From positions 124,001 to 188,000 of the IMG/VR virus record IMGVR_UViG_3300038465_000091: a stretch of DNA of 64,000 nt, one strand, 5' to 3'. Position 1 is the first letter of the stretch; each line of letters begins with the position of its first letter. Shown piece after piece: positions 5,362-18,587 of the stretch. The notes under the pieces were generated by a model. It searched no databases and was not told the origin of the DNA. It saw only the letters and a program-made list of their open reading frames with translations. The position numbers and the translations under genes were made by a program.

Positions 5362-5384
5362 ATTTTTGTGGTAGAATACATTAT

Positions 5385-5460: not shown

Positions 5461-5463
5461 AAT

Positions 5464-6363: not shown

Positions 6364-6621
6364 ATGGCAAAAATCAATAAGAAGACCAAGACCTGCGGTA
6401 GCACCACCTGCGTCGGCTGCCTGCCGCCGAAGAAGTTCGTATTCAAGATTGAGGGGAGCTTTGAGCTTCCAGCTTTCTGGACTGCGGACGCCGCCGAAGT
6501 GATACTGACAAAGGCTCTCGATCAGGGGTTGAACCTCATCGTCGAGGGGCGTTGCAGTAATAGCATCGAATACGCCGCTTACGTTTTCGAGGACAAAGAT
6601 GCCGACTCCAGCTTCCGTTGA
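6364..6621 (+). CDS. Hypothetical protein
   Basis: 85-aa ORF; ATG 7 nt after a TATATT box, possibly leaderless. Confidence 0.6.
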   Translation: MAKINKKTKTCGSTTCVGCLPPKKFVFKIEGSFELPAFWTADAAEVILTKALDQGLNLIVEGRCSNSIEYAAYVFEDKDADSSFR

Positions 6622-6713
6622 GATAATGCAGTACGCATAGTCCAAAATTCCTATCGATTCTGATCCATTTTTGGGTATAATAGTCTTTCAGGCTCTTCTA
6701 TAGGGGATACCTT

Positions 6714-7109
6714 ATGCATGGAACTGGCGATGTCTTAGGCGATCTGCTCAAGATCGCGGCAATGAACAAGGCGCAGATCGAGAAGCTCCTTGAACATTGG
6801 CAGATGGTGCAGCAAAAGAACCCCCCATCATCTGGGGAATGGCAAGACGCCTCAAAGCGAATCCACGAATTGGCCGAAATTCAACGACTCGTCACCGATG
6901 CGCTCAAGAACCCTTTTGGGAAGCCCGACTACAAGTTCGTCAACCTCGAAGAGGTCTCCGCTCTTTTCAAGCGTCAGATCGAGCGGCTGGGTTGCACCGA
7001 TGTCAAAATAGCGGCCACTTTGAATCACGACGCTATTGACATCGAAGCTCGCTTTACACCCCCGCCATCCCCAATTGTTATCAGTTTCACGGTTGAACCG
7101 AAGGAGTAA
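6714..7109 (+). CDS. Hypothetical protein
   Basis: 131-aa ORF downstream of a GGTATAAT box at ~6675. Confidence 0.65.
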   Translation: MHGTGDVLGDLLKIAAMNKAQIEKLLEHWQMVQQKNPPSSGEWQDASKRIHELAEIQRLVTDALKNPFGKPDYKFVNLEEVSALFKRQIERLGCTDVKIAATLNHDAIDIEARFTPPPSPIVISFTVEPKE

Positions 7110-7112
7110 CCC

Positions 7113-7325
7113 TTGGTTGAACACCACCACGAACGTTGCCACAGTTGCCATAAGCCGTTCGATCATGAATTGCTGGATTTCTTGTCCTGCGAATTGAATG
7201 AGTGCTACCGCTGCACTATGATCGACGAAAAAGACGCCTTCCGCCGTCTGCGGGAGTTGCGGCGTCGGATAATCGTCGGCAACCTGATGGATAGCGTGCC
7301 GATGGCGACGAAAGCGATCCAATGA
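7113..7325 (+). CDS. Small Cys/His-rich hypothetical protein
   Basis: AAGGAG RBS, TTG start; CxxC...CxxxxCxxC. Confidence 0.55.
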   Translation: MVEHHHERCHSCHKPFDHELLDFLSCELNECYRCTMIDEKDAFRRLRELRRRIIVGNLMDSVPMATKAIQ

Positions 7326-7615
7326 AACCCGATTGGACTCAAATCACCTTCGGCCCGCGTGCTCGCTGGGAACGCCGCGATGGGGCGATTGTGAGATACG
7401 ATGAGTCATCGCCATATCCCAACCCAGCCGTGTCCTCGGCAAAGATGTTCACGGCATGGGAGCCCGATCCTTCCGAGCGGGCGTTATCGATGGAGCGAGG
7501 CCACTGGCGAGTAGCTCAGGACGGGCACAGATTCAAGTTTTCGTTTCCTCGGCGATGGAAGACGGCAGAAGCAGCGATGCGGGCGGTGAACAAAGAATTC
7601 CCCTTTCAAAAATAA
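7322..7615 (+). CDS. Hypothetical protein
   Basis: ATGA overlap; 97 aa. Confidence 0.65.
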   Translation: MKPDWTQITFGPRARWERRDGAIVRYDESSPYPNPAVSSAKMFTAWEPDPSERALSMERGHWRVAQDGHRFKFSFPRRWKTAEAAMRAVNKEFPFQK

Positions 7616-7649
7616 TTTTCAAATTTCTATCGAAAATCTCGACTTCCAT

Positions 7650-7657
7650 GGTATTAT
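7650..7657 (+). promoter_or_regulatory. Extended -10 promoter of the tRNA operon (probably leaderless transcript)
   Basis: TG-G-TATTAT ends at 7657; the leader ATG is 7 nt downstream at 7665 with no SD sequence. Confidence 0.6.
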
Positions 7658-7664
7658 AGTAGAC

Positions 7665-7754
7665 ATGAAGCAGACACTCCAAACTCGAACTACAACGCAA
7701 CAAATTACAATTACGTGCGTGCGGGTCGGCGTGTCTGGTACTCAGGGTGAGTAA
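7665..7754 (+). CDS. Attenuator leader peptide MKQTLQTRTTTQQITITCVRVGVSGTQGE
   Basis: Translated by hand; codons 3-17 contain 7 Thr, 4 Gln and 2 Ile, matching the downstream tRNA species. Confidence 0.8.
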   Translation: MKQTLQTRTTTQQITITCVRVGVSGTQGE

Positions 7755-7785
7755 CCCCTAGAAAAATCAGAGACTTCCGAGCCGC
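7721..7785 (+). promoter_or_regulatory. Putative antiterminator helix
   Basis: GCGGGTCGG (7721-7729) pairs 8/9 with CCGAGCCGC (7777-7785), and GTGTCTGGT (7731-7739) pairs 8/9 with 7766-7774; this would sequester the 5' strand of the terminator. Confidence 0.7.
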
Positions 7786-7807
7786 CCACGGGCGGCTTTT
7801 GTATTTT
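7780..7807 (+). terminator. Intrinsic terminator (attenuator) immediately before the first tRNA
   Basis: AGCCGCC-CACG-GGCGGCT followed by TTTGTATTTT. Confidence 0.8.
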
Positions 7808-7883
7808 GGCGGGTAGCTCAACTGGCTAGAGCACTGAACTGATAATTCAGAGGTTGGGGGTTCAAGTCCCTCTCCGCCAACCA
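7807..7883 (+). tRNA. trnI: tRNA-Ile(GAT)
   Basis: Cloverleaf; anticodon arm CTGAA-CT-GAT-AA-TTCAG; encoded CCA. Confidence 0.9.
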
Positions 7884-7902
7884 AATTTTAGAGGAGGTAG
7901 TC

Positions 7903-8040
7903 ATGGCTGAGACCTTGGAACAAGAGGATTACTCGACGTGGACTTCGTGCCAGATGTACGGGCACAATTACGTGACTGATGAAGATCAGCCGAACTATCA
8001 CTTCTGTACCGACTGTGACGAAGCTTACTTTGACGAGTGA
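7903..8040 (+). CDS. Small Zn-finger-like protein (45 aa) within the tRNA array
   Basis: GAGGAGG RBS; MAETLEQEDYSTWTSCQMYGHNY...HFCTDCDEAYFDE. Confidence 0.6.
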   Translation: MAETLEQEDYSTWTSCQMYGHNYVTDEDQPNYHFCTDCDEAYFDE

Positions 8041-8050
8041 GTTTCGTTGT

Positions 8051-8124
8051 GGACCCGTCTTCCAATGGCAGGATCGGCGACCGATTATCGCTCAATGGTG
8101 GTTCGAATCCATCTGGGTCTACCA
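8051..8124 (+). tRNA. Atypical tRNA-Ile(GAT) (C33, U37)
   Basis: GGACCCG/TGGGTCT-A-CCA; anticodon arm GGCGA-CC-GAT-TA-TCGCT; T loop TTCGAAT. Confidence 0.65.
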
Positions 8125-8132
8125 AGTTCAAT

Positions 8133-8354
8133 GTGGCATATCGTACCCATACAGGGGCCGATTAGGGGAGTATAAGCCGCCTTATGGGTACAACGGACGA
8201 GCGACCATGCGAGGCGTGCGGAGTCAAGGCGGGTGGGAACCTGCGGATGCATGAGAAGGATTGTGCGTTGATCGCGAGTTATTGTGAAAGGTTTCCCGGG
8301 GGCAAGAACTCGCCGCAGTGGGAACGTAAAGGCCCTCGGATGAATGCGAAACAC
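8133..8354 (+). ncRNA. Putative structured RNA (~220 nt) inside the tRNA array, class unknown
   Basis: Stems GTACCCATA/TATGGGTAC, GCGGGT-GGGA-ACCTGC and GCGAGTT/AACTCGC; flanked by tRNAs; no RBS-led ORF. Confidence 0.45.
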
Positions 8355-8368
8355 TAAAATTTAGAAAT

Positions 8369-8450
8369 GCTAGCGTGGCACAGTGGCGACTGCAATGGTT
8401 CCGTAAACCATCATACAACACCGGGGGTTCGAGTCCCTTCGCTAGCTCCA
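8369..8450 (+). tRNA. trnT: tRNA-Thr(CGT), with C33 and an enlarged variable loop
   Basis: GCTAGCG/CGCTAGC-T-CCA; ATGGT-TC-CGT-AA-ACCAT. Confidence 0.8.
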
Positions 8451-8455
8451 GATTT

Positions 8456-8531
8456 GCAGACGTAACACAATTGGCAGTGTACTTTCTTGGTAAGAAAGAG
8501 GTTGTGGGTTCGACTCCCATCGTCTGCTCCA
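8456..8531 (+). tRNA. trnT: tRNA-Thr(GGT)
   Basis: GCAGACG/CGTCTGC-T-CCA; CTTTC-TT-GGT-AA-GAAAG. Confidence 0.9.
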
Positions 8532-8547
8532 TTTTTAGGAGAACAGC

Positions 8548-8844
8548 ATGTACAACTGTGAGATGTGCAACACGTCGTTCGAGGAAAAGGCGGACTTTCT
8601 CGCCCATCCTCATATCATCCAGAAGAAGCTACCAGTCGGTAGGGTGGAAGTGATGCACAGTTGCGGACACGTGGAAGTAGTCCGCAGTTTCGACGACCCG
8701 ATGTATTCGGAAGAGCGAATCGCAAAGCTCGGGAAGACGAAGGAACAGTTCGTAAAGGAACAGATTGAATGGTACGCGAGCGTGCCCTGTCCCGGCTGCT
8801 ACGTTCCTCGACACGGATATGCGATGAACGGGCCGTGTTGCTAG
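8548..8844 (+). CDS. Zn-finger hypothetical protein
   Basis: AGGAGA RBS; CxxC...H...H, HSCGH and CPGC motifs. Confidence 0.7.
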   Translation: MYNCEMCNTSFEEKADFLAHPHIIQKKLPVGRVEVMHSCGHVEVVRSFDDPMYSEERIAKLGKTKEQFVKEQIEWYASVPCPGCYVPRHGYAMNGPCC

Positions 8845-8886
8845 GCGGGTAAGCGCCTAAGAAAAGTTTAGGCGGAAAGACGCCTA
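8842..8886. repeat. Tandem pair of TAGGCG-N6-CGCCTA hairpins
   Basis: 8842-8859 and 8869-8886. Confidence 0.7.
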
Positions 8887-8895
8887 CAAAAATTT

Positions 8896-8980
8896 GCTAC
8901 TGTGGCTCAGCGGCGACAGCACCGCACCTGTAATGCGGCGGGGAAACCCCACGGGAGTTCGAGTCTCCCCGGTAGCTCCA
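8896..8980 (+). tRNA. trnT: tRNA-Thr(TGT), with C33 and a GGGG-AAA-CCCC variable arm
   Basis: GCTACTG/CGGTAGC-T-CCA; CCGCA-CC-TGT-AA-TGCGG. Confidence 0.8.
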
Positions 8981-9065
8981 AGTTCGATTGATTCGTATGC
9001 CAGAAAGTGACTTATACGTCGCTTTTCAGCTACGGATCGATCTAAAGTGACGTAGAAATCACATT

Positions 9066-9139
9066 TGGGAGATCGTTCAACGGCAGGACGACAGACTTTG
9101 AATCTGTCTATCTAGGTTCGAATCCTAGTCTCCCAGCCA
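9066..9139 (+). tRNA. trnQ: tRNA-Gln(TTG)
   Basis: TGGGAGA/TCTCCCA-G-CCA; ACAGA-CT-TTG-AA-TCTGT. Confidence 0.9.
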
Positions 9140-9151
9140 GTATTAGCCCTT

Positions 9152-9484
9152 ATGGGCTACAAAAACAAAACGGATCAACTAGCAAGCCAACGACGTTGGT
9201 ACAGCAACCATAAAGTTGAAGAGGTCGAACGAGTTCTTCAACGCCGACGTGATTTATACGACTGGCTCCGCAAATTAAAGAGAACTCTTAAGTGCAATCG
9301 GTGTCCCGAGAGTTTTTGGGTATGTTTGGATTTTCATCATACCGATCCAACTGAGAAGGACATGAGTGTGGCGCAGGCTGTTCGCAACGGTTGGAGCAAG
9401 AAACGCATCTTGGCTGAAATTGCCAAATGCGAGGTTCTTTGCAAGAACTGCCACGCGAAAGAGCACGCCAAAATTGGGAAGTAG
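9152..9484 (+). CDS. HNH homing endonuclease between two tRNA-Gln genes
   Basis: CNRC...LDFHH.DP..K......E..KC.VLC.NCH..EH pattern; its TAG stop lies in the following tRNA. Confidence 0.85.
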   Translation: MGYKNKTDQLASQRRWYSNHKVEEVERVLQRRRDLYDWLRKLKRTLKCNRCPESFWVCLDFHHTDPTEKDMSVAQAVRNGWSKKRILAEIAKCEVLCKNCHAKEHAKIGK

Positions 9485-9551
9485 CTCAATTGCGTAGAGC
9501 AACTGCCTTTGAAGCAGAAGGTTGGGGGTTCGAGTCCCTCCTTCCCAGCCA
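9475..9551 (+). tRNA. trnQ: tRNA-Gln(TTG), second divergent copy
   Basis: TGGGAAG/CTTCCCA-G-CCA; CTGC-CT-TTG-AA-GCAG. Confidence 0.85.
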
Positions 9552-9558
9552 AATTCTC

Positions 9559-10002
9559 ATGACTACCCATTTCATGGGTATGGACATCCTTCACAAATTC
9601 ATTCTGGGCGGTGAAATCTACCTCGCCGCCGCTTCAGGACTCGTTGTCGTTAGTGCGTTGTTCCGTAGCTGGCATCACCTTCGCGGCACATCGAACACCA
9701 TGCCAATGAACCCCGCGAACATCGCTATCGCTATGGCGAAGTCCAATAACGAAAGCCGCATCCACCGCTGGCTAGACGCGTTCGATATTTTCTTGAATGT
9801 CAGTTTTATGAACGGGTCCAACGATGAAACGATGTCCGCGCACGCATGGCGAGCATCCGTCGAAGGTCATCTGTGGGGCAAGGCGATGAACTGGTGGTTA
9901 AGTGGCTTCCAGCCGAACCACGGGTATCAAGCCGCTTGCGGCGATCTCCAGCGGGCGCTGAATCGCATGGCTGTTGAGAAGAAGGCGCTCGGCCTTCAGT
10001 AG
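9559..10002 (+). CDS. Hypothetical membrane protein
   Basis: ATG at 9559 in track ORF 9427..10002; one hydrophobic segment. Confidence 0.6.
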   Translation: MTTHFMGMDILHKFILGGEIYLAAASGLVVVSALFRSWHHLRGTSNTMPMNPANIAIAMAKSNNESRIHRWLDAFDIFLNVSFMNGSNDETMSAHAWRASVEGHLWGKAMNWWLSGFQPNHGYQAACGDLQRALNRMAVEKKALGLQ

Positions 10003-10178
10003 TTACGCCGTGCTGGTGCCTGTTCTTTGGTCCTTGCCTGTAAAAATTCCGCAGCTTTAATCAGCAATGCGGGGTCATCCGAGAAGCACCCCATACCCTT
10101 TGTTGTGCCAAACCAGTGCAATTTTGAGCATTTTGTGATAGACTTTTGAATGTGACTGACACTACCATTTTCAGTCAT
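9996..10178 (-). pseudogene. Possible remnant of an endonuclease VII-type gene
   Basis: C-terminal KGMGCFSDDPALLIKAAEFL resembles the G.G.F.D....L..A..YL tail of Endonuclease_7; the CxxC/HDH motifs are absent. Confidence 0.35.
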
Positions 10179-10244
10179 AAATCAAGTTTCAAAATTCCTA
10201 GCCAAAACGCAACCCCTTCGGTATAATGGGGACGAGGAGAATAC

Positions 10245-10607
10245 ATGGGAACAACTTGTCCATTGAATGATCTCGGGTTACATTTTTGTCAATGTAAGGA
10301 TGAGCCAGTTCGGTCGATCAACTCGAAAGAAGAGTTTACCCGCGCACTGACTCGCCTTGTCCTCACGCTAGCCGCTAAACTCGATCTGACGCCAACCGAT
10401 CTATACGGTGTGGTTGTTCGACTTAGTGACATCGATTCCGAGATCGTCACGAAATTCACCGAAGCACATGCGGGGCAGACTTTTGGTACCGCCGTTGAAG
10501 CGGGGCAGCGTAGCATGGAATTTCGCCGCGAATACCTCACCGCCCTTCTGGAAAATGAATCAAATATCTCAAACGAGGAACAGAACAATGAACTCACTAC
10601 TGACTAA
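10245..10607 (+). CDS. Hypothetical protein
   Basis: GGTATAAT box and GAGGAG RBS upstream. Confidence 0.65.
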   Translation: MGTTCPLNDLGLHFCQCKDEPVRSINSKEEFTRALTRLVLTLAAKLDLTPTDLYGVVVRLSDIDSEIVTKFTEAHAGQTFGTAVEAGQRSMEFRREYLTALLENESNISNEEQNNELTTD

Positions 10608-11373
10608 GGTTCGATCTCTTTCCGCTGGCGTGGTTGCCGTAGTTGTTGGTCTCTTCACACCAGCGACCATGCCCGCCCAAACCCCCACACCCACGTTTCA
10701 GGACACTTTTGTCGGCGGAAATTTCGATCCGTCGCTTTGGACCGTGGCCACTGGCCCAGCCGCTGGCGGCGGCGTGTATCTCGCGCAAAACGTGGACTCC
10801 TCCGAGGGACATTTGCGCCTGAAGCTCTCGCAGCGCAGAGAAGGCGCGGTTCTCATCTCCGAGGGCAGTGAAATCATGTCCAAGGGACTCTACGGATACG
10901 GCACCTACACCTACGTGATGCGGATGTCGTCAACCGCCGCCTCGCATAAACTTTCGGGCAAGTCTGTATCGGGTAGTGTGTCGGCTGGGTGGAATTACCT
11001 CCCGGGATCGGAGACCGAGATTGATTTCGAATTTCGTGCGGATAAGCCGAACGGCGTCCAAGTGGGTTGTTTCACGAATCGCGACCCATCGCGACAAGAG
11101 ACCCGCATCCATATCAGTTCGATGAGTAGGAACTCTAACTTAGAGCAAAGCTTCCACACATACACCTTTATATGGACTCCAAAGTCCATCGTTTGGTACG
11201 TAGATGGGAAAAAGTCTTGGCAGACGAACAGCAACGTGCCGACGAAGCCAGCCCAGATTCGCATCAACCACTGGGGCATCGACAATCCGAAGTTCGGCGG
11301 CTCAGCTACCGTGAACGTGGATCGGTACATGTACGTGAAGAGCGTGAGTTTCGCGCCCCTCGCGGGAAAGTAG
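10588..11373 (+). CDS. Secreted glycoside hydrolase family 16
   Basis: Signal-peptide-like N-terminus; catalytic ExDxE motif (EIDFEF); YGYGTY, FHTYTFIWTP and WYVDG segments typical of GH16. Confidence 0.85.
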   Translation: MNSLLTKVRSLSAGVVAVVVGLFTPATMPAQTPTPTFQDTFVGGNFDPSLWTVATGPAAGGGVYLAQNVDSSEGHLRLKLSQRREGAVLISEGSEIMSKGLYGYGTYTYVMRMSSTAASHKLSGKSVSGSVSAGWNYLPGSETEIDFEFRADKPNGVQVGCFTNRDPSRQETRIHISSMSRNSNLEQSFHTYTFIWTPKSIVWYVDGKKSWQTNSNVPTKPAQIRINHWGIDNPKFGGSATVNVDRYMYVKSVSFAPLAGK

Positions 11374-11379
11374 GGGACT

Positions 11380-11460
11380 GTGAACATCTACATCTACGTC
11401 GTTGCCCTTTTAGCGGTCATCATTGGCGTGCTTAAAAAGGCATATCGGAAAGAAAGCTGA
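11380..11460 (+). CDS. 26-aa single-pass membrane peptide coupled to the synthase
   Basis: GTG...MNIYIYVVALLAVIIGVLKKAYRKES; its TGA overlaps the ATG at 11460. Confidence 0.4.
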   Translation: MNIYIYVVALLAVIIGVLKKAYRKES

Positions 11461-12731
11461 TGCCTATGAAACACTATCTAACGCCCGAGTTCCTGATGGT
11501 CATAACGGTGTTGATGCCCGTGATCTACTTGGTCTTCAGGGCGATCTACATGGCTTTCTCCGAGACCATTCACCCGAAGAAGGCGCAGGTCCAGAAAGAC
11601 GTGAACCACACGCCCTCCGTGGCCGTGGTCATTCCGTGCTACAACGAAGGGAAGGGCGTCTACGACTGCATCAAGCATATCTGGGAGAGCGACTACCCGA
11701 AAGACATGCTCAAGATTTACCCGCAGGACGACGGCTCAGTGGACGACAGTTGGGAGTGGATGCTCAAGGCGGCGAAGGATTTTGATCGGGTGTACCCGGA
11801 AAGAAACGGCGGCGACGTACCGAAAAACAAAGGCAAGACGGACACGTACCTCAGGGCGATGGAACGTGCGGAGCCTTCCGAGATTCTCGTGAACGTGGAT
11901 TCCGACACTCTCGTCGGCACGGACACCATCAGAAAGATGTTGCAATGTTTCGCGGACCAACGTATCGGCGTCGTCGGCGCACCAGCGGGCATCATCAACG
12001 CGAACGACAGCATATTGACCGCGTTGCAGGCGTACAACTGGACATTCTACAACCAATTCCTCGTCAACCTTGAGAGCACCTACAGGGCCAATCAGGTGTG
12101 CGGCGGGTGGAGCCTCGCGGTCAGGCGGCACATCCTCGAAGAGATAGCCCCCGAAATTTTGGGTCGGCACTGGTTCGGCTGCTCCACCAAGGACGGGGAA
12201 GATCGTTTCATCACGCATCTGGCGCTTCTCCGAGGCTGGGACAGCTACGTAGTGCAGAACACGTGCAGCAAGACCCACGCAATGGAGAACTGGACGCGGT
12301 ATTGGGGACAGCAAGTACGATGGCGCAGAAGCACTTACCGAAGCTTCTGGTGGGTGCTGCGGAAACTGTGGTACCACACGGGGCGCATGAACCCTGCGGC
12401 TCTGTGGGCTATTCTCTCGCAGGGCTTCATGTTCTTCGCGCTCGTAATAATCATCGTCCACTTCGCCCTTACGATGCCCTTTGCCCTCCTGAGCCCTGTC
12501 AAGGTAGCTATTTTTCTTGGCATTTCTTCTGCCTTGATGATACTATGGGACAGGAAGATGAACTGGCAAAAACTCAGGAATCCGTTCAAAACCATATTGG
12601 TGATCCCGTGGGCCATCACCAGCATGTTCTATCTCGCCATCGTATGCCTGCTCTCGCTGGATCAGGATGCATGGGGAAACAGGATTAAAACAACGCCAAC
12701 ACCACCGACTTCGAAGGAGTTATCACAATGA
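11460..12731 (+). CDS. Processive GT2 polysaccharide synthase (hyaluronan synthase / NodC-like)
   Basis: IPCYNE, DDGS, VDSD, GEDR and QQVRW (QxxRW) motifs; N- and C-terminal TM helices. Confidence 0.85.
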   Translation: MPMKHYLTPEFLMVITVLMPVIYLVFRAIYMAFSETIHPKKAQVQKDVNHTPSVAVVIPCYNEGKGVYDCIKHIWESDYPKDMLKIYPQDDGSVDDSWEWMLKAAKDFDRVYPERNGGDVPKNKGKTDTYLRAMERAEPSEILVNVDSDTLVGTDTIRKMLQCFADQRIGVVGAPAGIINANDSILTALQAYNWTFYNQFLVNLESTYRANQVCGGWSLAVRRHILEEIAPEILGRHWFGCSTKDGEDRFITHLALLRGWDSYVVQNTCSKTHAMENWTRYWGQQVRWRRSTYRSFWWVLRKLWYHTGRMNPAALWAILSQGFMFFALVIIIVHFALTMPFALLSPVKVAIFLGISSALMILWDRKMNWQKLRNPFKTILVIPWAITSMFYLAIVCLLSLDQDAWGNRIKTTPTPPTSKELSQ

Positions 12732-13780
12732 AGTTTTTCGGGTTCGACAGAATCAATTTGATGCGGAAGGGCGTCTTGTCTGTCTACCGCGTCTTCTCAC
12801 TCGTCACGCTGTACAGCATCCTTTTCTGCATTTTGGCCTATGCGGGTGCCTTGCTGTTCTATTCGGCAAGCACGTCGTGGATCGTGCCATTCATGGTCAC
12901 CAAGTCCGACATTTCCGTGCTCGCGATAGGCGGTCAGTTGGCTACGTCCACTCAGGCCGTCAACGCGCTTCAACTGGACTACGACAAGACCGTCAAGACG
13001 CTGATCGAGGCAAAGGCGCAGGAGAAAAGCCTCGGTGCCCTCAACCGTCAGATTGACCGCACCATCACGGCACAGAAAAAGGTGTGGGCTGGTCCTACCG
13101 TCGAACTGAAGGATTACGAAACGCAAAAGAAAACCAACAACGCGGTCCTGACGCAAGACACCCTCACGGGCAAGGACCTGCGCCGTATCATCCAAAAAGA
13201 CTTGGCAGAAGGGATTATCACGAAGGCGGACGCCGAGACGGAATTGCTTCAGTTGGACTCGTTTGACAACGCCGCCACGGACAGCAAGATCGCCACGACC
13301 CTGCTGAACGATAGCGTCCGCCAGCACCAGATGGTTGACATCAGCGGACTCGATGTTCTGGCGCAGAAGGCCCAACTAGAAGTCCTGATAAGCCAAGTAC
13401 GTGTGGTGGTCGAGACTGCCGAAGAGGAATTGAGTCTTGACCGAGCGTCCATCAAGGTCATTGACGAGGTTGTCAAGACCGCGACGGGCAGCCCGTTCTA
13501 CTCGGTGATTGATGCGGCTAAGCCAGTTTCATTGGCAATCGTGCCGTACAACCTTGACACTCCGCGTTTGCCACAGGGGGCTCAGGTGTTCGACTGCTTC
13601 TTTGGCATGGTGATATGCCGTAAAGCGGGCACGATCAAAGCGGTGTACACGAATGAGCAATTGTTCGAGCACCCCATCCTTCACATCAACATGCGCGGGT
13701 ACATCGTGGCAATCGACGTGGATGACGATGCCGCCAAGTCGAAAACCCTCATCGTGGGACGCAAGCCATTCTTATTCTAG
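12728..13780 (+). CDS. Membrane-anchored coiled-coil protein, possibly a membrane-fusion/adaptor export component
   Basis: N-terminal TM helix, long heptad helical region, beta-rich C-terminus; translationally coupled to the GT2 gene. Confidence 0.45.
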   Translation: MKFFGFDRINLMRKGVLSVYRVFSLVTLYSILFCILAYAGALLFYSASTSWIVPFMVTKSDISVLAIGGQLATSTQAVNALQLDYDKTVKTLIEAKAQEKSLGALNRQIDRTITAQKKVWAGPTVELKDYETQKKTNNAVLTQDTLTGKDLRRIIQKDLAEGIITKADAETELLQLDSFDNAATDSKIATTLLNDSVRQHQMVDISGLDVLAQKAQLEVLISQVRVVVETAEEELSLDRASIKVIDEVVKTATGSPFYSVIDAAKPVSLAIVPYNLDTPRLPQGAQVFDCFFGMVICRKAGTIKAVYTNEQLFEHPILHINMRGYIVAIDVDDDAAKSKTLIVGRKPFLF

Positions 13781-13788
13781 GGAGAAAT

Positions 13789-14862
13789 ATGAAAACGCTG
13801 GTTATTATCGCTGCTCTACTCCTCACGGGAGTCTCCCAAGCGCAAATCGCGCTTGACCAGAAGGACCATTGCGATGCTATGATGGAGCAGGCGAGGGGTC
13901 TCGCGGCCCAGCTTCGCATCCCCAGTCTCGTCGTTGGGGGCACCGCACCAGCCGCAGGCACAGCACCCCAGATTTATACGGGCCTGCAAAACAGCCTTGC
14001 CAGCGATAGGAAGGCTGCCGACGCGATCCAACTCGCTATCCGCACGTGTTCGCTGTACAACACCACGGAGGATGCCACGTTGCGGTTGTTTTACGCCGCT
14101 CCCAGCTTGCAGAAAACCGCACTGGATCACCGCGCCATCATCGACAGCATAGCGGAGACCCAGTTGAACACCATAATCGCGGACGCACAGAAAAGGGTCG
14201 AAGCACAAAACTTGCCACGGCCCGCGCTCTACCTGTTGCAATCCTCTCGGGCTAGGCTGGAATTGGACAGGGCATCGTCTGCGGCGACCGCCGTGGCTTT
14301 CTATATTCCCGAGGGAATGAACCCCGCGCCCATCAGCCAGTTGCTCAGCATCAAGCAGCAAGAGGAAATCATCGTACAGAAAGCCACGGAAAAGTATGCC
14401 CGAGCGGCTAATTGGGACGTGCTGTTTGAGGGTGGTATGCATCACCAGCTAACATCCACTAGCACTCCGGGGACGCCCGTCAGCAGTTCGACAGGTGCTT
14501 ATGGCGGAGCGACTCTCACTTGGGGTCTCGGCACCCAAAAGGCCGACAAGCATTTCGACAAGGCTGTGACGGCATACGGCAAGTGGAAAGAGACGCAGGA
14601 AGGCGATGTCATCCGTACCGCCATCGCCCTCAGAAAGACGCTCACGGACAGCATCACCGTGCTCGGGAGCAACCTGAAGATGCTACAAGATCAGGGAGAC
14701 GCAATCGACGCCAATCTCGAACTGGTCAAGGACGCCGACACCAGCGCGTCCCTCGCTTTCAAGATGCAGTTGCAGGCCGACAGATTGCTGCTTAGGGTTG
14801 AAGTCGAGGACACGCAGTTCCGCCTCGATGCCTTGCAGACGTACCTAGCGGACAACTTTTAA
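13789..14862 (+). CDS. Secreted helical protein, possibly outer-membrane efflux (TolC-like)
   Basis: Signal peptide; helical repeats alternating with beta segments (WDVLFEGGMHHQL, YGGATLTWGLG); operon context. Confidence 0.4.
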   Translation: MKTLVIIAALLLTGVSQAQIALDQKDHCDAMMEQARGLAAQLRIPSLVVGGTAPAAGTAPQIYTGLQNSLASDRKAADAIQLAIRTCSLYNTTEDATLRLFYAAPSLQKTALDHRAIIDSIAETQLNTIIADAQKRVEAQNLPRPALYLLQSSRARLELDRASSAATAVAFYIPEGMNPAPISQLLSIKQQEEIIVQKATEKYARAANWDVLFEGGMHHQLTSTSTPGTPVSSSTGAYGGATLTWGLGTQKADKHFDKAVTAYGKWKETQEGDVIRTAIALRKTLTDSITVLGSNLKMLQDQGDAIDANLELVKDADTSASLAFKMQLQADRLLLRVEVEDTQFRLDALQTYLADNF

Positions 14863-14868
14863 GGGGAT

Positions 14869-16243
14869 ATGATGAAGATCGCGATTGTGGGTAGCGGATA
14901 CGTGGGGCTCGTGGCAGGCGCTTGTTTCGCCGAAATCGGGCACGATGTCGTGCTGGTGGACAACGACCCCAAGAAGTTAGCGGTGCTCAGGGCGGGGCAG
15001 TGCCCCATTCACGAAGAACAATTGCCAGAATTGTTGAAGAAACATTTGGGGCGTAAGCTCACGTTTACTGACAACCTTCATCAGGCGGTGAGCGCAAGCA
15101 AGGCTATTTTCATTGCTGTAGGTACGCCAGACGGTGGTGATGGTAAGGCCGACTTGTCCTATGTCGAAGCTGTAGTCCGATCCATCGCGGGGGCGATTAA
15201 CGACTATAAGGTGATCGTGGAAAAATCCACGGTGCCTGTATTGACAAGTGAAGCCATTCGCCAAACCCTCCTGCTTAACGGAGCGGACCCCACCAAATTT
15301 GACGTAGCGTCGAATCCCGAATTTTTGAAAGAGGGTACGGCGGTCGCCGATTTCCTTCGCCCAGATCGGATTGTGATTGGCACCGACAGTGAGCGAGCCA
15401 TCGGTGTCTTACGGGAAATTTATGCCCCCATGGTCGCCAGTGGCTATCGTTTGATCGAAACCAGCACCAAAAGCGCCGAACTCATCAAGCACGCATCCAA
15501 CGCTTTCCTTGCGATGAAAATCAGTTTCGTCAACGCTGTCGCTTCGGTGTGTGAGCAAGTGGGGGCAGACGTGACGGAAGTTGCCGAGGGCGTTGGCGCG
15601 GATAGTCGTATTGGACCGCAATTCCTCAAGCCGGGTATCGGCTACGGGGGTTCTTGTTTTCCCAAGGACTTGATGGCATTCAAAGCTGTCGCGGAACAGA
15701 ACCATTACAAGATCAGGCTGTTGGAAGAAGTCAGCCATATCAACGGCGATCAACAAAAACGGTTCATGAGCAAAATTCGTGAAGCTCTCTGGACGTTGCG
15801 TGGGAAACGGTTGGCGGTTCTGGGGCCTCGCATTCAAGGGAGGCACGGATGACATCCGTGAATCCCCCGCGATCTCGATCATCCAAACGCTCTTGAAGGA
15901 AGGTTGCCACATCGTGGCGTACGACCCCGCCGCCATGGATAATGCTCGCAAGGCGTTTAATGAGTGCTCGACCACGTGTCCTCATAAATGTGATGGGACT
16001 ATCGAGTACGCAACAGACTCATACGCGGCGGCTCGGAACGCAGACGCTTTGTTGATACTGACGGATTGGCCTGAATTTGTGGAATTGAATTTGGACCAAC
16101 TTGAGTTAAAAAACCCTTTGGTGATCGATGGGCGCAACCTGTACGATCCGAAGGTTATGGCGAATCTTGGGTTTACCTACTACAGCGTAGGTCGCCCCAT
16201 AGTGCGCGGCAAGACACCCGAAAAATTGGCAGCAACCGAATAA
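14869..16243 (+). CDS. ugd: UDP-glucose 6-dehydrogenase, split by a one-base frameshift at the G-run 15822-15825
   Basis: GSGYVG Rossmann motif, VEKSTVP, SNPEFLKEG and GYGGSCFPKD in 14869..15852; (L)GLAFKGGTDDIRES and DGRN in 15779..16243. Removing one G joins them. Confidence 0.9.
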
Positions 16244-16353
16244 CGGGTTGTGTCCACCCCACTAACGTGCTATAGTGGTAATACACCACCAGTGGTAACA
16301 TTTTCATTGTAGCAAGTAACTTGACTTCACCAAGAAAAGGAAAAGAGAAAAAT

Positions 16354-17793
16354 ATGAATTTCAAACGTACGTTGTTTTTGGCAGTAATGGCGATGGCTCT
16401 ATCATGTACGGCTTTCGCGTGGAATTGTTCCGATCCTCTGGCATCGCGTGTTGACGTAGGACCAGTCAATCCGGGCGGCTCCGCAGGCGACGGCGACGGC
16501 CAGTGGTTCCTCGGCACAGGTTCCGAAGGCACCAAGGGTGACTACTACGTCTGCGAAGTTCCCAAGAAGTCCACAGGCGGCGGGTCTTCGACCACGAACA
16601 CGAATTCCAACACCAACAATAACTCCAACCAGCAAGGTCAGCAACAAGGTCAGCAACAGGGCCAACAGCAAGGACAGACCGCGAACGGCGGCTCCTCGTC
16701 CAGCACCGCTACGGGCGGCAACGCCACGGGTGGTAATGCGACAGCCACAGGCGGACAGGGCGGAAGCTCTTCGTCCAAGTCTGGCGTAACCAACAGCGGC
16801 AACTCTTCCGCGACAGGTGGTGCGGGTGGGGCTGGCGGTGCAGGTGGTGCAGGCGGTTCAGTGAGTGGTTCAGGTAACTCCACGAACACGAACAACGTGA
16901 ACACGACCGTGGCTCCCGTTATCACTTCGACGAACAAGCTGAGCAACAGCGGCAACTCGTCCAACACGAACAACAACACCGCGAACGGCGGCACGTCGAA
17001 TGCCAACGGCAACGGCTCGAACAACACGACTTCGGCTTCGTCCAACCAGACGCAATCGAACTCTTCGACCAATGCCAATCAGTCGTCAGCTTCTAACCAA
17101 GCGAACGGCAACGGCAGCAACTCGAATAACACCGTCAACAACTCAGTAGTGGAAGCTCCGAAAATTCCGGTTAACACTGCTTACGCTCCGACAACCATCC
17201 CAACGTCACCCTGTCTCAAGTCTTACAGCGGCGGCGGGCAGGGTTCAAGCTTCGGTTTGAGCTTCGGCGGAAGTAAGTCAGACAAGAACTGCCAACTGCT
17301 TGAGCTTGCACGATCCTTTGATTCCATGAACGAGCGTCTGGCAGGCTGCAAGATTAAGGTTGAAGCTGCCAAGAAGATCGCCAAGGATGCCGATGTCACA
17401 GTGGAAGACTGCATGATGCATGAGATGGTCGCCGTTCCAGTTCCTACGGCGCTATTAGCACCTATTGCTGCACCTGCCCCACAGGTGATCGTGGTTCAAG
17501 TGCCAGCGGTCGCGCCCGCTCCCGTCGCTCCAGTCGTCTCGAATGTCATTTCGTCCTTCCAAGGCTTCTACACGCAATTCAACAACGTGGCGAAGGCGCG
17601 GTTCGACGGAACGATTCTCTTGATGAAGAACAACCTCGATGGTCATCTTCGCCTTCGTTTCAACCCCGCAACTGCGGCGGTCGTTGATAGCATTCAAGCG
17701 TACCTGATTGCTAACGGCATTGACCGTGAGCGCATCGAAGCGCGTGATGACGGCCATGAAAAGGGCGTCGAAGTGCTCTTCATCGCTCAGTAG
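16354..17793 (+). CDS. Secreted low-complexity (N/S/G/Q-rich) protein with a Cys-containing domain and a degenerate OmpA-like C-terminus
   Basis: Signal peptide; QQGQ repeats and N/S/G tracts; C-terminal ...IQAYLIANGIDRERIEAR. Confidence 0.65.
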   Translation: MNFKRTLFLAVMAMALSCTAFAWNCSDPLASRVDVGPVNPGGSAGDGDGQWFLGTGSEGTKGDYYVCEVPKKSTGGGSSTTNTNSNTNNNSNQQGQQQGQQQGQQQGQTANGGSSSSTATGGNATGGNATATGGQGGSSSSKSGVTNSGNSSATGGAGGAGGAGGAGGSVSGSGNSTNTNNVNTTVAPVITSTNKLSNSGNSSNTNNNTANGGTSNANGNGSNNTTSASSNQTQSNSSTNANQSSASNQANGNGSNSNNTVNNSVVEAPKIPVNTAYAPTTIPTSPCLKSYSGGGQGSSFGLSFGGSKSDKNCQLLELARSFDSMNERLAGCKIKVEAAKKIAKDADVTVEDCMMHEMVAVPVPTALLAPIAAPAPQVIVVQVPAVAPAPVAPVVSNVISSFQGFYTQFNNVAKARFDGTILLMKNNLDGHLRLRFNPATAAVVDSIQAYLIANGIDRERIEARDDGHEKGVEVLFIAQ

Positions 17794-17810
17794 TCCAGCC
17801 CCTCCCCACG

Positions 17811-17843
17811 ACCCCTCGCCGATCCTTGGCGGGGGGTTTTCTT
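17811..17843 (+). terminator. Intrinsic terminator
   Basis: CCCCTCGCC...GGCGGGGGG followed by TTTTCTTT. Confidence 0.75.
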
Positions 17844-17859
17844 TGTGGTATTATAGGAT

Positions 17860-18132
17860 ATGCAACGACACGACCTGAAAACATGGCCGAAGCAGTTCCG
17901 TGCCATCCTCGCAGGTAGCAAGCGGTATGAACTTCGAGTCAACGACCGCAACTTTCAAGAAGGCGACGAGTTGATGCTGCTGGAATGGGACCCCAAGGCA
18001 GAGAAGTACACGGGGCGGCACATCCTGACGACCGTGACGTACATGACCCGAGGCGGTGAGTTTGGGCTTCCAGAAAATTTGGTGGTAATGTCGCTTGCGA
18101 TTCAGTATTGGAATACGGGGAATGCTGCGTGA
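17860..18132 (+). CDS. ASCH/PUA-like protein (DUF3850 type)
   Basis: HDLKTWP..F.AI..G.K.YELR.NDR.FQ.GD.L.L.EW pattern. Confidence 0.8.
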   Translation: MQRHDLKTWPKQFRAILAGSKRYELRVNDRNFQEGDELMLLEWDPKAEKYTGRHILTTVTYMTRGGEFGLPENLVVMSLAIQYWNTGNAA

Positions 18133-18587
18133 TTCGAAAATGCAAATACGGGCATGAATTGACGCCCGAGAATCTAACTGGAAGAAAGCGGAAACAGTGT
18201 AAACTATGCCGTCGTGCCAGTTGCAAGAAATGGCGTGACGCCCATCTAGACGAACAACACGCTCGAACGTCGGCGTGGAACCGTGCGAATCGTAAAAGGT
18301 GCAACGCCGCCAGTTTGCGTTCCCGACGAAAGAAACGATGCGATTTGACCCCTCAACAGTGGGAACGGACTTTGAGACGCCAGAAGGGTAAATGTGCGAA
18401 TACGGGCTGCCCAAATCCCGCTTCACACGCAGACCATGACCATTTGACGAGGAAATTTCGTGGTGGGCTATGCAATACTTGTAATCTGGCTCTCGGGCAC
18501 CTAAAAGACAGTATTAAACGAATAAGGGGTTTAGCAAACTACCTGCGGAGGCACCTTGCGAAGAACAAAAGCCGGGTTCGTTCTTGA
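18129..18587 (+). CDS. Endonuclease VII-type HNH homing endonuclease
   Basis: CKYGH...CKLC N-terminus; QKGKC...C...DHDH...RGGLCNTCNLALG. Confidence 0.85.
   Translation: MIRKCKYGHELTPENLTGRKRKQCKLCRRASCKKWRDAHLDEQHARTSAWNRANRKRCNAASLRSRRKKRCDLTPQQWERTLRRQKGKCANTGCPNPASHADHDHLTRKFRGGLCNTCNLALGHLKDSIKRIRGLANYLRRHLAKNKSRVRS

What the first reader, a model, noticed from the sequence alone, without database searches (positions are those of the whole stretch)
10588..16243. Complete phage-encoded polysaccharide synthesis and export module
Seen in sequence: an overlapping, co-oriented GH16 hydrolase, membrane peptide, processive GT2 synthase (QxxRW), TM coiled-coil protein, secreted helical protein and UDP-glucose dehydrogenase. 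Established knowledge: a GT2 synthase plus Ugd is the core of hyaluronan synthesis in streptococci and chloroviruses, and synthase-dependent secretion systems typically include a periplasmic glycan hydrolase and an outer-membrane export protein. Inference: the phage coats the infected cell with a uronic-acid glycan, for receptor masking, aggregation or protection.
Basis: partly seen in the sequence, partly recalled or inferred. Interest (0 to 1): 0.68.

Follow-up and report, generated by a model that had tools for sequence, protein, structure and literature searches.

The report
Phage-encoded polysaccharide synthesis-export module
A jumbo phage from peat soils, probably infecting Acidobacteria, carries a bacterial-type operon predicted to make a sugar polymer and pass it through both cell membranes; the adjacent sugar-precursor gene is broken in this strain, and a sister strain has a very different version of the operon.

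Summary
They are a lichenase-type GH16, a 26-aa membrane peptide, a HAS/NodC-type GT2 synthase with all catalytic motifs, and proteins X and Y.

X and Y have no Pfam match. Y folds as a TolC-like outer-membrane channel and is predicted to trimerise. X most resembles periplasmic adaptors, but weakly.

GT2-X-Y is a conserved operon. All 80 fetched bacterial loci carry it, nearly all Acidobacteriota, and so do at least five further phage contigs.

The architecture is tripartite (synthase, adaptor, TolC-like channel), as proposed for rhizobial mixed-linkage glucan and cyanobacterial cellulose. It is not the classical porin type.

Two corrections:
- The UDP-glucose dehydrogenase gene is split by one extra G. 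The insertion is present in three runs from three studies and in a second IMG/VR record. A sister strain has the gene intact.
- Ugd is not a conserved part of the module, so the uronic-acid or hyaluronan reading is weak for this genome.

New finding: a sister phage about 99.9-100% identical in both flanks has only 40-65% nucleotide identity across GH16-GT2-X and 70-83% across Y. This is an allelic cassette replacement.

The polymer and its function are unknown.

The parts
10199..10227 (+). Promoter-like site upstream of the unit (TAGCCA-17-TATAAT)
   Evidence: Consensus scan, 10 of 12 matches. A pattern match only.
10245..10607 (+). 120-aa ORF of unknown function. It is the conserved left flank, and the left breakpoint of the replaced cassette lies at about 10562 inside its 3' end.
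   Evidence: No Pfam match. 97% aa identity in sister contig L002. The alignment shows identity ending at about 10562.
10562..14700 (.). Replaced (allelic) cassette: GH16, peptide, GT2, X and most of Y
   Evidence: The flanks are about 99.9-100% identical to sister contigs L002 and L087. The interior is 40-65% identical across GH16/GT2/X and 70-83% across Y. The alternative allele co-occurs in run X2.
10588..11373 (+). Secreted GH16 glycoside hydrolase, lichenase type
   Evidence: PF00722, E 1.7e-20. Nearest solved structures are Bacillus/Paenibacillus 1,3-1,4-beta-glucanases, E 1e-13. E144, D146 and E148 are invariant. N-terminal hydrophobic signal.
11380..11460 (+). 26-aa single-pass membrane peptide with a basic tail, found only in phage copies
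   Evidence: Hydropathy 2.29. Similar peptides sit directly before GT2 in phage contigs L002 and L090/L091. One of 80 bacterial loci (L052) gave a hydrophobic ORF there of a different kind, probably the misplaced GT2 N-terminus. The scan also missed the window's own peptide in L001, so it has false negatives.
11460..12731 (+). GT2 polysaccharide synthase, HAS/NodC/chitin-synthase type
   Evidence: Pfam GT2 families. NodC is the best NCBIfam model, far below its cut-off. Cv-HAS 7sp7, E 2e-11. D90/D91, D147-S-D149, G-E-D-R 246-249, Q-Q-x-R-W 284-288 and W-G-x-R 405-408 are invariant in 14 family members. Membrane segments at 6-34 and 312-400.
12728..13780 (+). Protein X: inner-membrane-anchored, long-helical protein resembling periplasmic adaptors
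   Evidence: AF2 pLDDT 80. Membrane helix, then a strand, four long helices and a small beta domain. Best Foldseek matches are EmrA (9.5e-5) and MacA (6.3e-4). Nearest named Atlas clusters are LcnD/HlyD adaptors. No Pfam match.
13789..14862 (+). Protein Y: compact TolC-like outer-membrane channel subunit
   Evidence: AF2 pLDDT 87 with two strand-pair plus long-helix repeats. 38 Foldseek matches at E 1e-11 to 3e-8, all outer-membrane factors (TolC, OprM, CusC, VceC and kin). Predicted homotrimer ipSAE 0.74 against control 0.00. Nearly all homologues end in N-Y or N-F.
14869..15852 (+). UDP-glucose 6-dehydrogenase, NAD-binding and central domains (frame 1; ends in 10 out-of-frame codons)
   Evidence: PF03721 6e-61 and PF00984 3e-36. 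TIGR03026 349 bits against a cut-off of 189.8.
15821..15824 (+). Frameshift site: GGGG here, GGG in the intact sister gene
   Evidence: Confirmed in runs X1, X2 and X4 and in record L100.
15779..16243 (+). UDP-glucose 6-dehydrogenase, UDP-binding domain (frame 2)
   Evidence: PF03720 2.8e-30. 96% identical to the matching part of the intact L087 gene.
16321..17793 (+). Secreted low-complexity (G/S/N/Q-rich) protein. It is the conserved right neighbour in related phages and may belong to the same transcription unit.
   Evidence: No Pfam match. 100% identical in L087 and L100, 74% in L101, 34% in L098, each downstream of Y. Absent from the bacterial loci.
17810..17838 (+). Terminator-like hairpin (13 pairs, T-rich tail) closing the putative unit
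   Evidence: A pattern match only.

Best explanation
The region is a self-contained, phage-carried 'tripartite' synthase-dependent exopolysaccharide system of acidobacterial type.

Proposed mechanism:
- The inner-membrane GT2 polymerises a beta-linked glycan from UDP-sugars and threads it through its own C-terminal membrane bundle.
- Protein X, anchored in the inner membrane, spans the periplasm as an adaptor.
- Protein Y forms a trimeric TolC-like duct through the outer membrane.
- The secreted lichenase-type GH16 trims or releases the chain in the periplasm.
- A phage-specific 26-aa membrane peptide probably assists or activates the synthase.

Expressed during infection, the module would add a new surface polymer to the infected cell.

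Ugd was added to the module in this phage lineage only. In this strain it is most likely inactive, so precursors must come from the host, and uronic acid in the product is doubtful here.

Basis of each step:
- Shown: gene content, folds, catalytic motifs, synteny, the frameshift and the cassette replacement.
- Inferred: that the proteins assemble, that a polymer is exported, its chemistry and its benefit to the phage.
For: 1. GT2 is of the processive HAS/NodC/chitin-synthase type. Its catalytic and C-terminal motifs are all invariant, and it has the membrane-bundle architecture.
2. Y has a TolC fold, a predicted trimer with inter-protomer strand pairing at residues 46-48 and 244-247, a signal peptide and a C-terminal aromatic residue.
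3. X has the topology of an adaptor. Its nearest named relatives are all periplasmic adaptors.
4. GT2-X-Y is colinear in all 78 of the 80 fetched genome loci that extend far enough upstream. 147 species genomes matched the X profile. It also occurs in phage contigs L002/L087, L088/L089, L090/L091, L098, L099 and L101.
5. GH16 sits directly upstream of GT2 in bacterial loci L004/L007 and L026 and in phages L002 and L098. This makes it a module partner rather than a stray gene.
6. There is experimental precedent. TolC is required for mixed-linkage glucan production by BgsA (GT2) and BgsB (HlyD-like). The authors propose a tripartite complex and cite cyanobacterial cellulose systems of the same kind (PMC13438883).
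7. The genes overlap or abut, which is consistent with translational coupling. A promoter-like site and a strong terminator-like hairpin bracket 10245-17793.
Against: - The adaptor assignment of X is weak: Foldseek TM-scores are about 0.2, there is no Pfam hit, hhalign against a genuine adaptor from L005 gave nothing, and VIA-align returned only generic coiled coils.
- Y matches no OEP profile by sequence. It is about 70-100 residues shorter than classical TolC-family chains.
- No contact between GT2, X and Y was tested.
- Expression evidence is thin: two exact contigs over the GH16 region in one metatranscriptome, which may be DNA carry-over.
- Signs of decay exist. Ugd is frameshifted here, and X carries an in-frame TAA in the L090/L091 lineage.
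- The polymer is unknown.
Confidence: 0.65

Rival explanations
1. One reading: the module makes a hyaluronan-like or other uronic-acid glycan, with Ugd supplying UDP-glucuronate, and coats the infected cell.
For: - The best solved relatives of GT2 are hyaluronan synthases.
- Many homologues carry JGI's automatic name 'hyaluronan synthase'.
- Ugd is adjacent and intact in sister contig L087.
- Chloroviruses combine HAS with UDP-glucose dehydrogenase and cover infected cells with hyaluronan fibres (PMC5408694).
Against: - Ugd is frameshifted in this strain in every record and run examined. No second copy exists in the 223 kb held.
- Ugd is next to the operon in 1 of 80 bacterial loci and is absent from the other phage lineages.
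- The partner hydrolase is lichenase-type GH16. That hints at a beta-1,3/1,4 glycan; hyaluronan also alternates these linkages, so it is not excluded.
- The NodC equivalog score is far below its cut-off, and no HAS-specific model was available to test.
Confidence: 0.2
2. The module is decaying cargo: recently captured host genes under relaxed selection, with no role in infection.
For: The Ugd frameshift persists across studies. There is a nonsense codon in X of L090/L091, seen in two runs.
Against: - GH16, GT2, X and Y are intact here with every conserved motif.
- The module sits at the same genomic position in related phages whose backbone genes are only 65-85% identical, L098 and L101.
- Phage copies form their own deep, long-branched group instead of nesting in the main bacterial clade. 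This indicates long residence in phages.
- A phage-specific peptide gene has been added.
Confidence: 0.1
3. GH16 is a phage depolymerase used to cut the host's own exopolysaccharide for entry or release, and only happens to lie next to the synthase operon.
For: Phages commonly carry glycan depolymerases (general knowledge). GH16 is absent from 76 of the 80 fetched bacterial and phage-associated GT2-X-Y loci.
Against: - It has a Sec-type signal and no tail-fibre or virion domain.
- It lies directly upstream of, or overlaps, GT2 in two bacterial genomes and three phage lineages.
- It is replaced together with GT2 in the cassette swap: 39% and 59% aa identity between alleles.
Confidence: 0.1
4. 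X and Y form an efflux or type-I-like secretion pair for another substrate, and the GT2 is a non-processive lipid or protein glycosyltransferase.
For: TolC-like and adaptor-like folds usually serve efflux pumps and type I secretion.
Against: - No ABC, RND or MFS transporter gene accompanies X and Y in the window or in the four annotated loci L004-L006 and L088.
- GT2 is the only inner-membrane partner, and it has the Q-x-x-R-W and W-G-x-R signatures and the C-terminal membrane bundle of the HAS/NodC/chitin-synthase group, most of which are processive synthases.
Confidence: 0.05

Closest known systems
BgsA-BgsB-TolC mixed-linkage beta-glucan system of Sinorhizobium meliloti (PMC13438883)
   Same: An inner-membrane GT2 synthase, a HlyD-like adaptor and a TolC-type outer channel, proposed to form a tripartite complex. 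The product is cut by lichenase, the enzyme class closest to this module's GH16.
   Different: - BgsA is of the cellulose/curdlan-synthase type with a c-di-GMP-binding C-terminus. The GT2 here is of the HAS/NodC type with no such domain.
- TolC there is the general housekeeping channel encoded elsewhere. Here a dedicated, shorter channel gene lies in the operon.
- No hydrolase gene belongs to bgsBA.
- The system is bacterial, not viral.
Cyanobacterial tripartite cellulose secretion system (Maeda et al. 2018, as cited in PMC13438883 and PMC12430437)
   Same: A synthase plus a HlyD-like and a TolC-like component exporting a polysaccharide.
   Different: The synthase is a cellulose synthase. No sequence relation to X or Y was detected here. 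It is not phage-borne.
Class I hyaluronan synthase and chlorovirus polysaccharide genes (PBCV-1 HAS, UDP-GlcDH, GFAT; PMC5408694)
   Same: - It is the closest solved relative of the GT2 (7sp7, E 2e-11).
- A virus makes its host extrude a surface polysaccharide.
- A UDP-glucose dehydrogenase gene is present in the virus.
- One chlorovirus has replaced has with a 5-kb chitin-synthase cassette, which parallels the cassette swap seen here.
   Different: - The chlorovirus genes are scattered and include no export machinery.
- The host is a eukaryotic alga.
- Here the genes form one operon with adaptor, channel and hydrolase, and Ugd is broken.
- The product is unknown.
NodC chitooligosaccharide synthase; streptococcal HasA/HasB; pneumococcal type 3 synthase with Cps3D (PMC2192726)
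   Same: - Protein size of about 400-420 aa.
- One N-terminal helix, a GT-A domain and a C-terminal membrane bundle.
- The G-E-D-R and Q-Q-x-R-W-x-x-S signatures.
- Pairing of the synthase with a Ugd gene in the has and cps3 loci (from established knowledge).
   Different: - The NodC model scores 112.7 bits against an equivalog cut-off of 550.
- Those are Gram-positive or Nod-factor systems without a periplasmic adaptor or outer channel.
- No GH16 partner.
Classical synthase-dependent systems (Bcs, Pga, Alg, Pel)
   Same: A processive inner-membrane synthase, a periplasmic glycan hydrolase or lyase, and an outer-membrane exit.
   Different: Their outer-membrane exit is a TPR-linked 16-18-stranded porin (BcsC, PgaA, AlgK/AlgE). 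Here it is an adaptor plus a TolC-like trimer. No c-di-GMP receptor domain was found.
TolC/OprM outer-membrane factors and EmrA/MacA/HlyD adaptors
   Same: The fold of Y, including its predicted trimer. The overall topology of X.
   Different: No sequence-level match to either family. Y has about 340 mature residues against about 430-470. X appears to have only a membrane helix, a double hairpin and one small beta domain.

Membership tests
GH16 glycoside hydrolases (lichenase-type) | Match to the family profile above its curated cut-off | tested here: met
   PF00722 73.7 bits against a cut-off of 22.
GH16 glycoside hydrolases (lichenase-type) | Catalytic E-x-D-x-E motif on one strand | tested here: met
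   E-I-D-F-E at residues 144-148 aligns with E-I-D-I-E of 1mac. It is invariant in four homologues.
GH16 glycoside hydrolases (lichenase-type) | Beta-1,3-1,4-glucan 4-glucanohydrolase activity | not testable with these tools
   The BglS and ExoK equivalog models score 77 and 67 bits against cut-offs of 300 and 350. Substrate unknown.
Processive GT2 synthases of the HAS/NodC/chitin-synthase group | GT-A domain with D, DxD, (G)EDR and Q-x-x-R-W motifs | tested here: met
   D90/D91, D147-S-D149, G246-E-D-R249 and Q284-Q-V-R-W288 are all invariant in 14 family members.
Processive GT2 synthases of the HAS/NodC/chitin-synthase group | Membrane bundle after the catalytic domain (the channel) and a C-terminal W-G-x-R motif | tested here: met
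   Hydrophobic segments at 312-400. W405-G-N-R408 invariant. Based on hydropathy only; no structure was made.
Processive GT2 synthases of the HAS/NodC/chitin-synthase group | Equivalog-level match to NodC, PgaC or cellulose synthase | tested here: not met
   NodC 112.7 against 550; PgaC 70.7 against 422; BcsA 30 against 992. It is a separate subfamily.
Processive GT2 synthases of the HAS/NodC/chitin-synthase group | Processive polymerisation, and identity of the product | not testable with these tools
   Needs biochemistry.
Hyaluronan (has-type) locus | Synthase functionally coupled to an intact UDP-glucose dehydrogenase | tested here: not met
   Ugd is frameshifted here. It is adjacent in 1 of 80 bacterial loci and absent from phage contigs L088, L090, L098, L099 and L101.
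UDP-glucose 6-dehydrogenase | Three domains (NAD-binding, central, UDP-binding) in one polypeptide | tested here: not met
   All three domains are present but lie on two reading frames. The sister gene in L087 is intact at 457 aa.
Outer-membrane factor (TolC family) | Protomer with two repeats of a strand pair plus long helices | tested here: met
   AF2 secondary structure. 38 Foldseek matches at E 1e-11 to 3e-8, all outer-membrane factors (TolC, OprM, CusC, VceC and kin), with TM 0.36-0.47.
Outer-membrane factor (TolC family) | Homotrimer closing a 12-stranded barrel | tested here: met
   Prediction only. ipSAE 0.74 against 0.00 for the best of 3 controls; runs agree in at least 82% of contacts; partner pLDDT at least 81. 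Calibration: the mark was reached by 20 of 30 solved pairs and 1 of 23 single chains. The job used three copies and my own alignment, so these counts hold only roughly.
Outer-membrane factor (TolC family) | Sequence match to the OEP profile | tested here: not met
   No Pfam or NCBIfam match. The PDB profile search was empty. hhalign against an OEP protein of L005 gave nothing.
Periplasmic adaptor / membrane fusion proteins | Membrane anchor, alpha-helical hairpin and a lipoyl-type beta domain assembled from N- and C-terminal strands | tested here: inconclusive
   The topology fits. Foldseek gives EmrA 9.5e-5 and MacA 6.3e-4, but with TM about 0.2. The nearest named Atlas clusters are HlyD/LcnD adaptors at low scores. 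VIA-align was dominated by generic coiled coils. No profile match. The beta domain was not folded on its own.
Tripartite synthase-adaptor-channel EPS secretion (Bgs/Xcs type) | The three components physically coupled and required for export | not testable with these tools
   Supported only by strict gene order in all 78 of the 80 fetched loci that extend far enough upstream.

The most novel reading that the evidence does not exclude
Jumbo and mega-phages of peat Acidobacteria carry, at a fixed genomic position, a complete trans-envelope exopolysaccharide machine that includes their own TolC-like outer-membrane channel. The machine behaves like a serotype locus. Whole GH16-GT2-adaptor-channel alleles are exchanged between otherwise identical phages, and synthase and hydrolase change together. 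This would mean the surface polymer of the infected cell is under diversifying selection, for example in phage-against-phage exclusion, where rival phages carry matching depolymerases.
Probability: 0.3. Interest if true: 0.85.

Novelty: new variant of a known kind. Interest (0 to 1): 0.7.

Why it matters
Viruses that make their host extrude a polysaccharide are known from chloroviruses. There the genes are scattered, no export apparatus is encoded, and the purpose is still debated. This phage carries the whole route across a Gram-negative envelope in one operon.

- No TolC-like fold was found among the predicted viral structures of BFVD.
- The papers searched describe neither this acidobacterial GT2-X-Y operon nor a phage copy.
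- The operon is widespread in Terriglobia, which dominate acidic peat and tundra soils, and two of its three proteins have no family assignment. Naming X and Y as adaptor and channel gives a testable model for an uncharacterised exopolysaccharide pathway in those soils.
- The cassette replacement between near-identical phages, the phage-only peptide and the strain-specific loss of Ugd are natural experiments on what the polymer does for the phage.

Tried and rejected
- A DNA search of the module against deposited phage genomes found no match.
- Single-protein scans of IMG/VR with GT2 and X found nothing. Profile scans later found four viral contigs.
- Profile searches of X and Y against PDB sequences gave only coiled-coil noise for X and nothing for Y.
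- hhalign of the X and Y profiles against a genuine adaptor and OEP protein of locus L005 gave nothing.
- The VIA-align second look for X was dominated by generic helical bundles and is uninformative.
- Programmed +1 frameshifting or transcript slippage at the Ugd site was considered and set aside. The run is only four G, no stop or rare codon follows it, and the zero frame continues for ten codons. A restart at GTG 15779 or 15800 would replace the first strand of the UDP-binding domain. This is inference, not a test.
- Read-through of the GH16 TAG stop into the in-frame peptide by the phage's CTA-anticodon tRNA was considered. It is not conserved, because in L002 the peptide is in another frame behind a TGA stop.
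- An OmpA-like C-terminus for the 490-aa protein was inconclusive: 14 bits in the L098 homologue and nothing in the window copy.
- One exact 36-mer from the left flank, scanned in JGI metagenome contigs, found only one more copy of the window allele and no third allele.
- No integrase was found in the 223 kb held. The record is about 71% complete, so this is not proof of a lytic lifestyle.
- A tree with characterised HAS, NodC, Cps3S and BgsA sequences was not made. No tool supplied those sequences, and I did not type them from memory.
- The large representative-protein search was left unused, as the operators advised.

Full report
**Context**

The window is positions 124001-188000 of a 223.5-kb IMG/VR virus record, estimated 71% complete.
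- Nearly all long ORFs are on the + strand.
- A 1220-aa protein matches a tail-sheath PHROG and a 656-aa protein matches a DNA-helicase PHROG.
- There is an array of ten tRNA genes at 5024-9551.

This is a jumbo phage. No integrase was found in the part held.

**The observation**

The six genes are at the stated coordinates.

| Gene | Coordinates | Main evidence |
|---|---|---|
| GH16 | 10588-11373 | PF00722, E 1.7e-20 |
| Membrane peptide | 11380-11460 | 26 aa; its stop overlaps the GT2 start |
| GT2 | 11460-12731 | Several GT2 families |
| X | 12728-13780 | No family match |
| Y | 13789-14862 | No family match |
| Ugd, two frames | 14869-15852 and 15779-16243 | Three Ugd domains |

- GH16: its closest solved relatives are Bacillus and Paenibacillus 1,3-1,4-beta-glucanases. 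The E-x-D-x-E catalytic residues are invariant among four homologues. It has an N-terminal signal-like segment.
- GT2: NodC is the best NCBIfam model, at 112.7 bits against a cut-off of 550. Chlorella-virus and Xenopus hyaluronan synthases are the best solved relatives. The D, DxD, G-E-D-R, Q-Q-x-R-W-x-x-S and C-terminal W-G-x-R positions are invariant in 14 family members. One N-terminal and several C-terminal hydrophobic segments flank the catalytic domain.

**Ugd is broken**

- The NAD-binding and central domains are in one frame and the UDP-binding domain is in another.
- The cause is one extra G in a G-run at 15821-15824.
- Sister contig L087 has GGG there, is otherwise identical around the site, and encodes an intact 457-aa enzyme.
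- Contigs from three runs of three studies cross the site without a gap.
- IMG/VR record L100, from another sample, is 99.96% identical over 9 kb with no gap.

The frameshift is therefore real and established in this phage population. Nothing at the site suggests programmed frameshifting; that is my inference. No second Ugd gene exists in the 223 kb held.

**X and Y**

With alignments of homologues, AlphaFold2 gave confident models.

Y (pLDDT 87) shows two repeats of a strand pair followed by long helices.
- Foldseek against the PDB returned 38 matches at E 1e-11 to 3e-8. All are outer-membrane factors: TolC, OprM, CusC, VceC, MtrE and CmeC.
- A three-copy complex prediction scored ipSAE 0.74, against 0.00 for the best of three controls. 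The runs agree in at least 82% of contacts and partner pLDDT is at least 81.
- In calibration the mark was reached by 20 of 30 solved pairs and 1 of 23 single chains. This job used three copies and my own alignment, so these counts hold only roughly.
- Strands 46-48 of one copy pair with 244-247 of the next, as expected for a closed barrel.
- Y has a signal peptide. Nearly all homologues end in N-Y or N-F.

X (pLDDT 80) has a membrane helix, a short strand, four long helices and a small C-terminal beta domain.
- Its best Foldseek matches are the adaptors EmrA and MacA, with low TM-scores.
- The only named look-alikes in the ESM Atlas are HlyD/LcnD-type adaptors.
- Sequence-profile tests found nothing, and VIA-align saw only coiled coils.

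I rate Y as TolC-like with high confidence and X as adaptor-like with moderate confidence.

**Synteny**

An X profile matched 147 species genomes of GTDB. Of the 80 loci fetched, nearly all are labelled Acidobacteriota or Terriglobia: Acidoferrum, Sulfotelmatobacter, Angelobacter, Terracidiphilus and Acidobacteriaceae. A few bins carry other labels.

- All 78 loci that reach far enough upstream have GT2-X-Y in the same order.
- GH16 precedes GT2 in only two bacterial genomes, L004/L007 and L026.
- Ugd is nearby in one locus, L065, on the opposite strand.
- The conserved core is therefore GT2-X-Y. GH16 is an accessory of one subgroup.
- Ugd is an addition of this phage lineage.

The host assignment to Acidobacteriota rests on this distribution and is an inference.

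**Precedent**

TolC is required for mixed-linkage beta-glucan production by the GT2 BgsA and the HlyD-like BgsB in Sinorhizobium meliloti. The authors propose a tripartite complex and cite similar cyanobacterial cellulose systems (PMC13438883). The module here has the same logic, with three differences: a HAS/NodC-type synthase, a dedicated channel gene inside the operon, and a lichenase-type hydrolase.

**The module in phages**

Besides the window, GT2-X-Y occurs on these phage-like contigs:

| Contigs | Size or source |
|---|---|
| L002 + L087 | Sister strain |
| L088/L089 | Logan contigs |
| L090/L091 | Logan contigs |
| L098 | 463-kb IMG/VR record |
| L099 | 111.5-kb IMG/VR record |
| L101 | 155-kb IMG/VR record |

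- L098 and L101 share backbone genes with the window at 65-90% nucleotide identity. They carry the module at the same position, followed by a homologue of the 490-aa low-complexity protein.
- In quick maximum-likelihood trees, all six phage GT2 copies group with the two GH16-bearing bacterial copies (SH-aLRT 100). They stand apart from the 74 other bacterial copies.
- The Y tree gives a similar split (97-99) but pairs the phage copies differently.
- The branches are long, so the topology is provisional. It points to long residence and reshuffling of the module among phages rather than recent capture.

**Cassette replacement**

Contigs L002 and L087, from one JGI sample, compare with the window as follows:

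| Window region | Nucleotide identity |
|---|---|
| 1457-10562 (left flank) | 99.9% |
| GH16, peptide, GT2, X | 40-65% |
| Y | 70-83% |
| about 14700 to 18564 (right flank) | About 100%, apart from a 91-98% stretch inside Ugd |

- At protein level the alleles are 39% identical for GH16, 59% for GT2, 56-65% for X and 81% for Y.
- Both alleles occur in the same peat run: a loose end in X2 matches L002 exactly.
- The window-type Y is physically linked to the frameshifted Ugd (X1 contig 13627-15997). The other allele is linked to the intact Ugd (L087).
- One reading is that Ugd became dispensable after the swap. With one example of each linkage, this is only a hypothesis.

**The peptide**

A short hydrophobic ORF with a basic tail sits immediately before GT2 in the window, in L002 (in a different frame from GH16) and in L090/L091. 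Among 80 bacterial loci, one (L052) gave a hydrophobic ORF there, which looks like the misplaced GT2 N-terminus. The scan also missed the window's own peptide in L001, so it has false negatives. The peptide looks like a real, phage-specific gene. Its role, which I guess is to help or activate the synthase in the absence of host control, is untested.

**What the polymer might be**

- The synthase type makes beta-linked chains in known families: hyaluronan, chitin oligomers and the pneumococcal type 3 polymer.
- The partner hydrolase is closest to enzymes that cut a beta-1,4 bond next to a beta-1,3-substituted residue.
- A glycan with beta-1,3 and/or beta-1,4 linkages is therefore my best guess.
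- Whether it contains glucose, N-acetylglucosamine or glucuronate cannot be decided here.

**Function for the phage**

This is inferred only. Candidates are blocking adsorption of other phages, aggregation of infected cells, and protection of the infected cell in an acidic soil that freezes and thaws. The allele replacement fits best with a trait under diversifying selection. In chloroviruses, which are the nearest viral analogue, the purpose of the surface fibres is also unresolved, and one virus has swapped has for a chitin-synthase cassette (PMC5408694).

**Occurrence and expression**

- Six peat or permafrost runs from five studies hold at least 70% of the module's sampled words.
- One metatranscriptome holds two exact contigs over 10595-10807 and 11225-11485. 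This is a hint of expression, not proof.

**Novelty**

- No TolC-like fold was found in BFVD at E <= 0.001.
- The module has no DNA match among deposited phage genomes.
- The papers searched describe neither the acidobacterial operon nor a phage copy.
- The parts are of known kinds. What is new is the combination, its presence in a virus, and the allelic exchange.

Noticed in passing
window 5385-5543: The tRNA array includes a tRNA with anticodon CTA (an amber suppressor, which ARAGORN calls tRNA-Pyl). Directly after it is a tRNA-like gene with a four-base anticodon, CTAG. TAG ends 10 of 46 long ORFs in the window, so it is still a normal stop. The GH16 gene ends in TAG and the membrane peptide follows in the same frame, so read-through would give GH16 a membrane anchor. 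This arrangement is not conserved in sister allele L002.
   Followed up: partly
G000:C1:203800-212500 (locus L096 3803-12534), outside the window: A second glycan locus in the same phage. It holds GT6, GT31-like, GT11 (fucosyltransferase family) and GT2 genes, two NAD-dependent epimerase/GDP-mannose-dehydratase-like genes, and a GT31/GT6 fusion. It looks like a fucose-containing glycan pathway, and it may be another consumer of nucleotide sugars.
   Followed up: partly
window 16321-17793: A 490-aa secreted protein with long G/S/N/Q-rich low-complexity tracts and a proline-rich linker. It follows Y in all related phages (100% identical in L087 and L100, 74% in L101, 34% in L098) but is absent from the bacterial operons. 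A strong terminator-like hairpin follows it at 17810-17838. An OmpA-like C-terminus was inconclusive.
   Followed up: partly
L090 9343-9345 and L091 (same position in X): In another phage lineage the X gene carries an in-frame TAA where the window has a glutamate codon. It is seen in contigs of two different runs. This may be a second case of decay within a phage copy of the module.
   Followed up: partly
window 15043-15792: Within the otherwise near-identical Ugd gene, identity to L087 falls to 97-99% from about 15043. It reaches a low of 91-92% at 15568-15792. This may be a separate recombination tract.
   Followed up: no
L098 (IMGVR_UViG_3300033405_000001, 463 kb): A 463-kb megaphage record shares the tRNA region, the DUF3850 gene and the helicase with the window at 65-82% nucleotide identity. 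It carries a third allele set at the same place: GH16 37%, GT2 33%, X 33% and Y 37% aa identity. An extra small GT2 gene lies upstream, and there is no Ugd and no peptide.
   Followed up: partly
window 10595-10807 and 11225-11485: Two exact contigs from a peat metatranscriptome (run X16) lie on GH16 and on the GH16-peptide-GT2 junction. None covers the rest of the module.
   Followed up: no
window 7807-9551: The tRNA array holds duplicates: two tRNA-Ile(GAT), three tRNA-Thr (CGT, GGT, TGT) and two tRNA-Gln(TTG). Small ORFs are interleaved between them.
   Followed up: no
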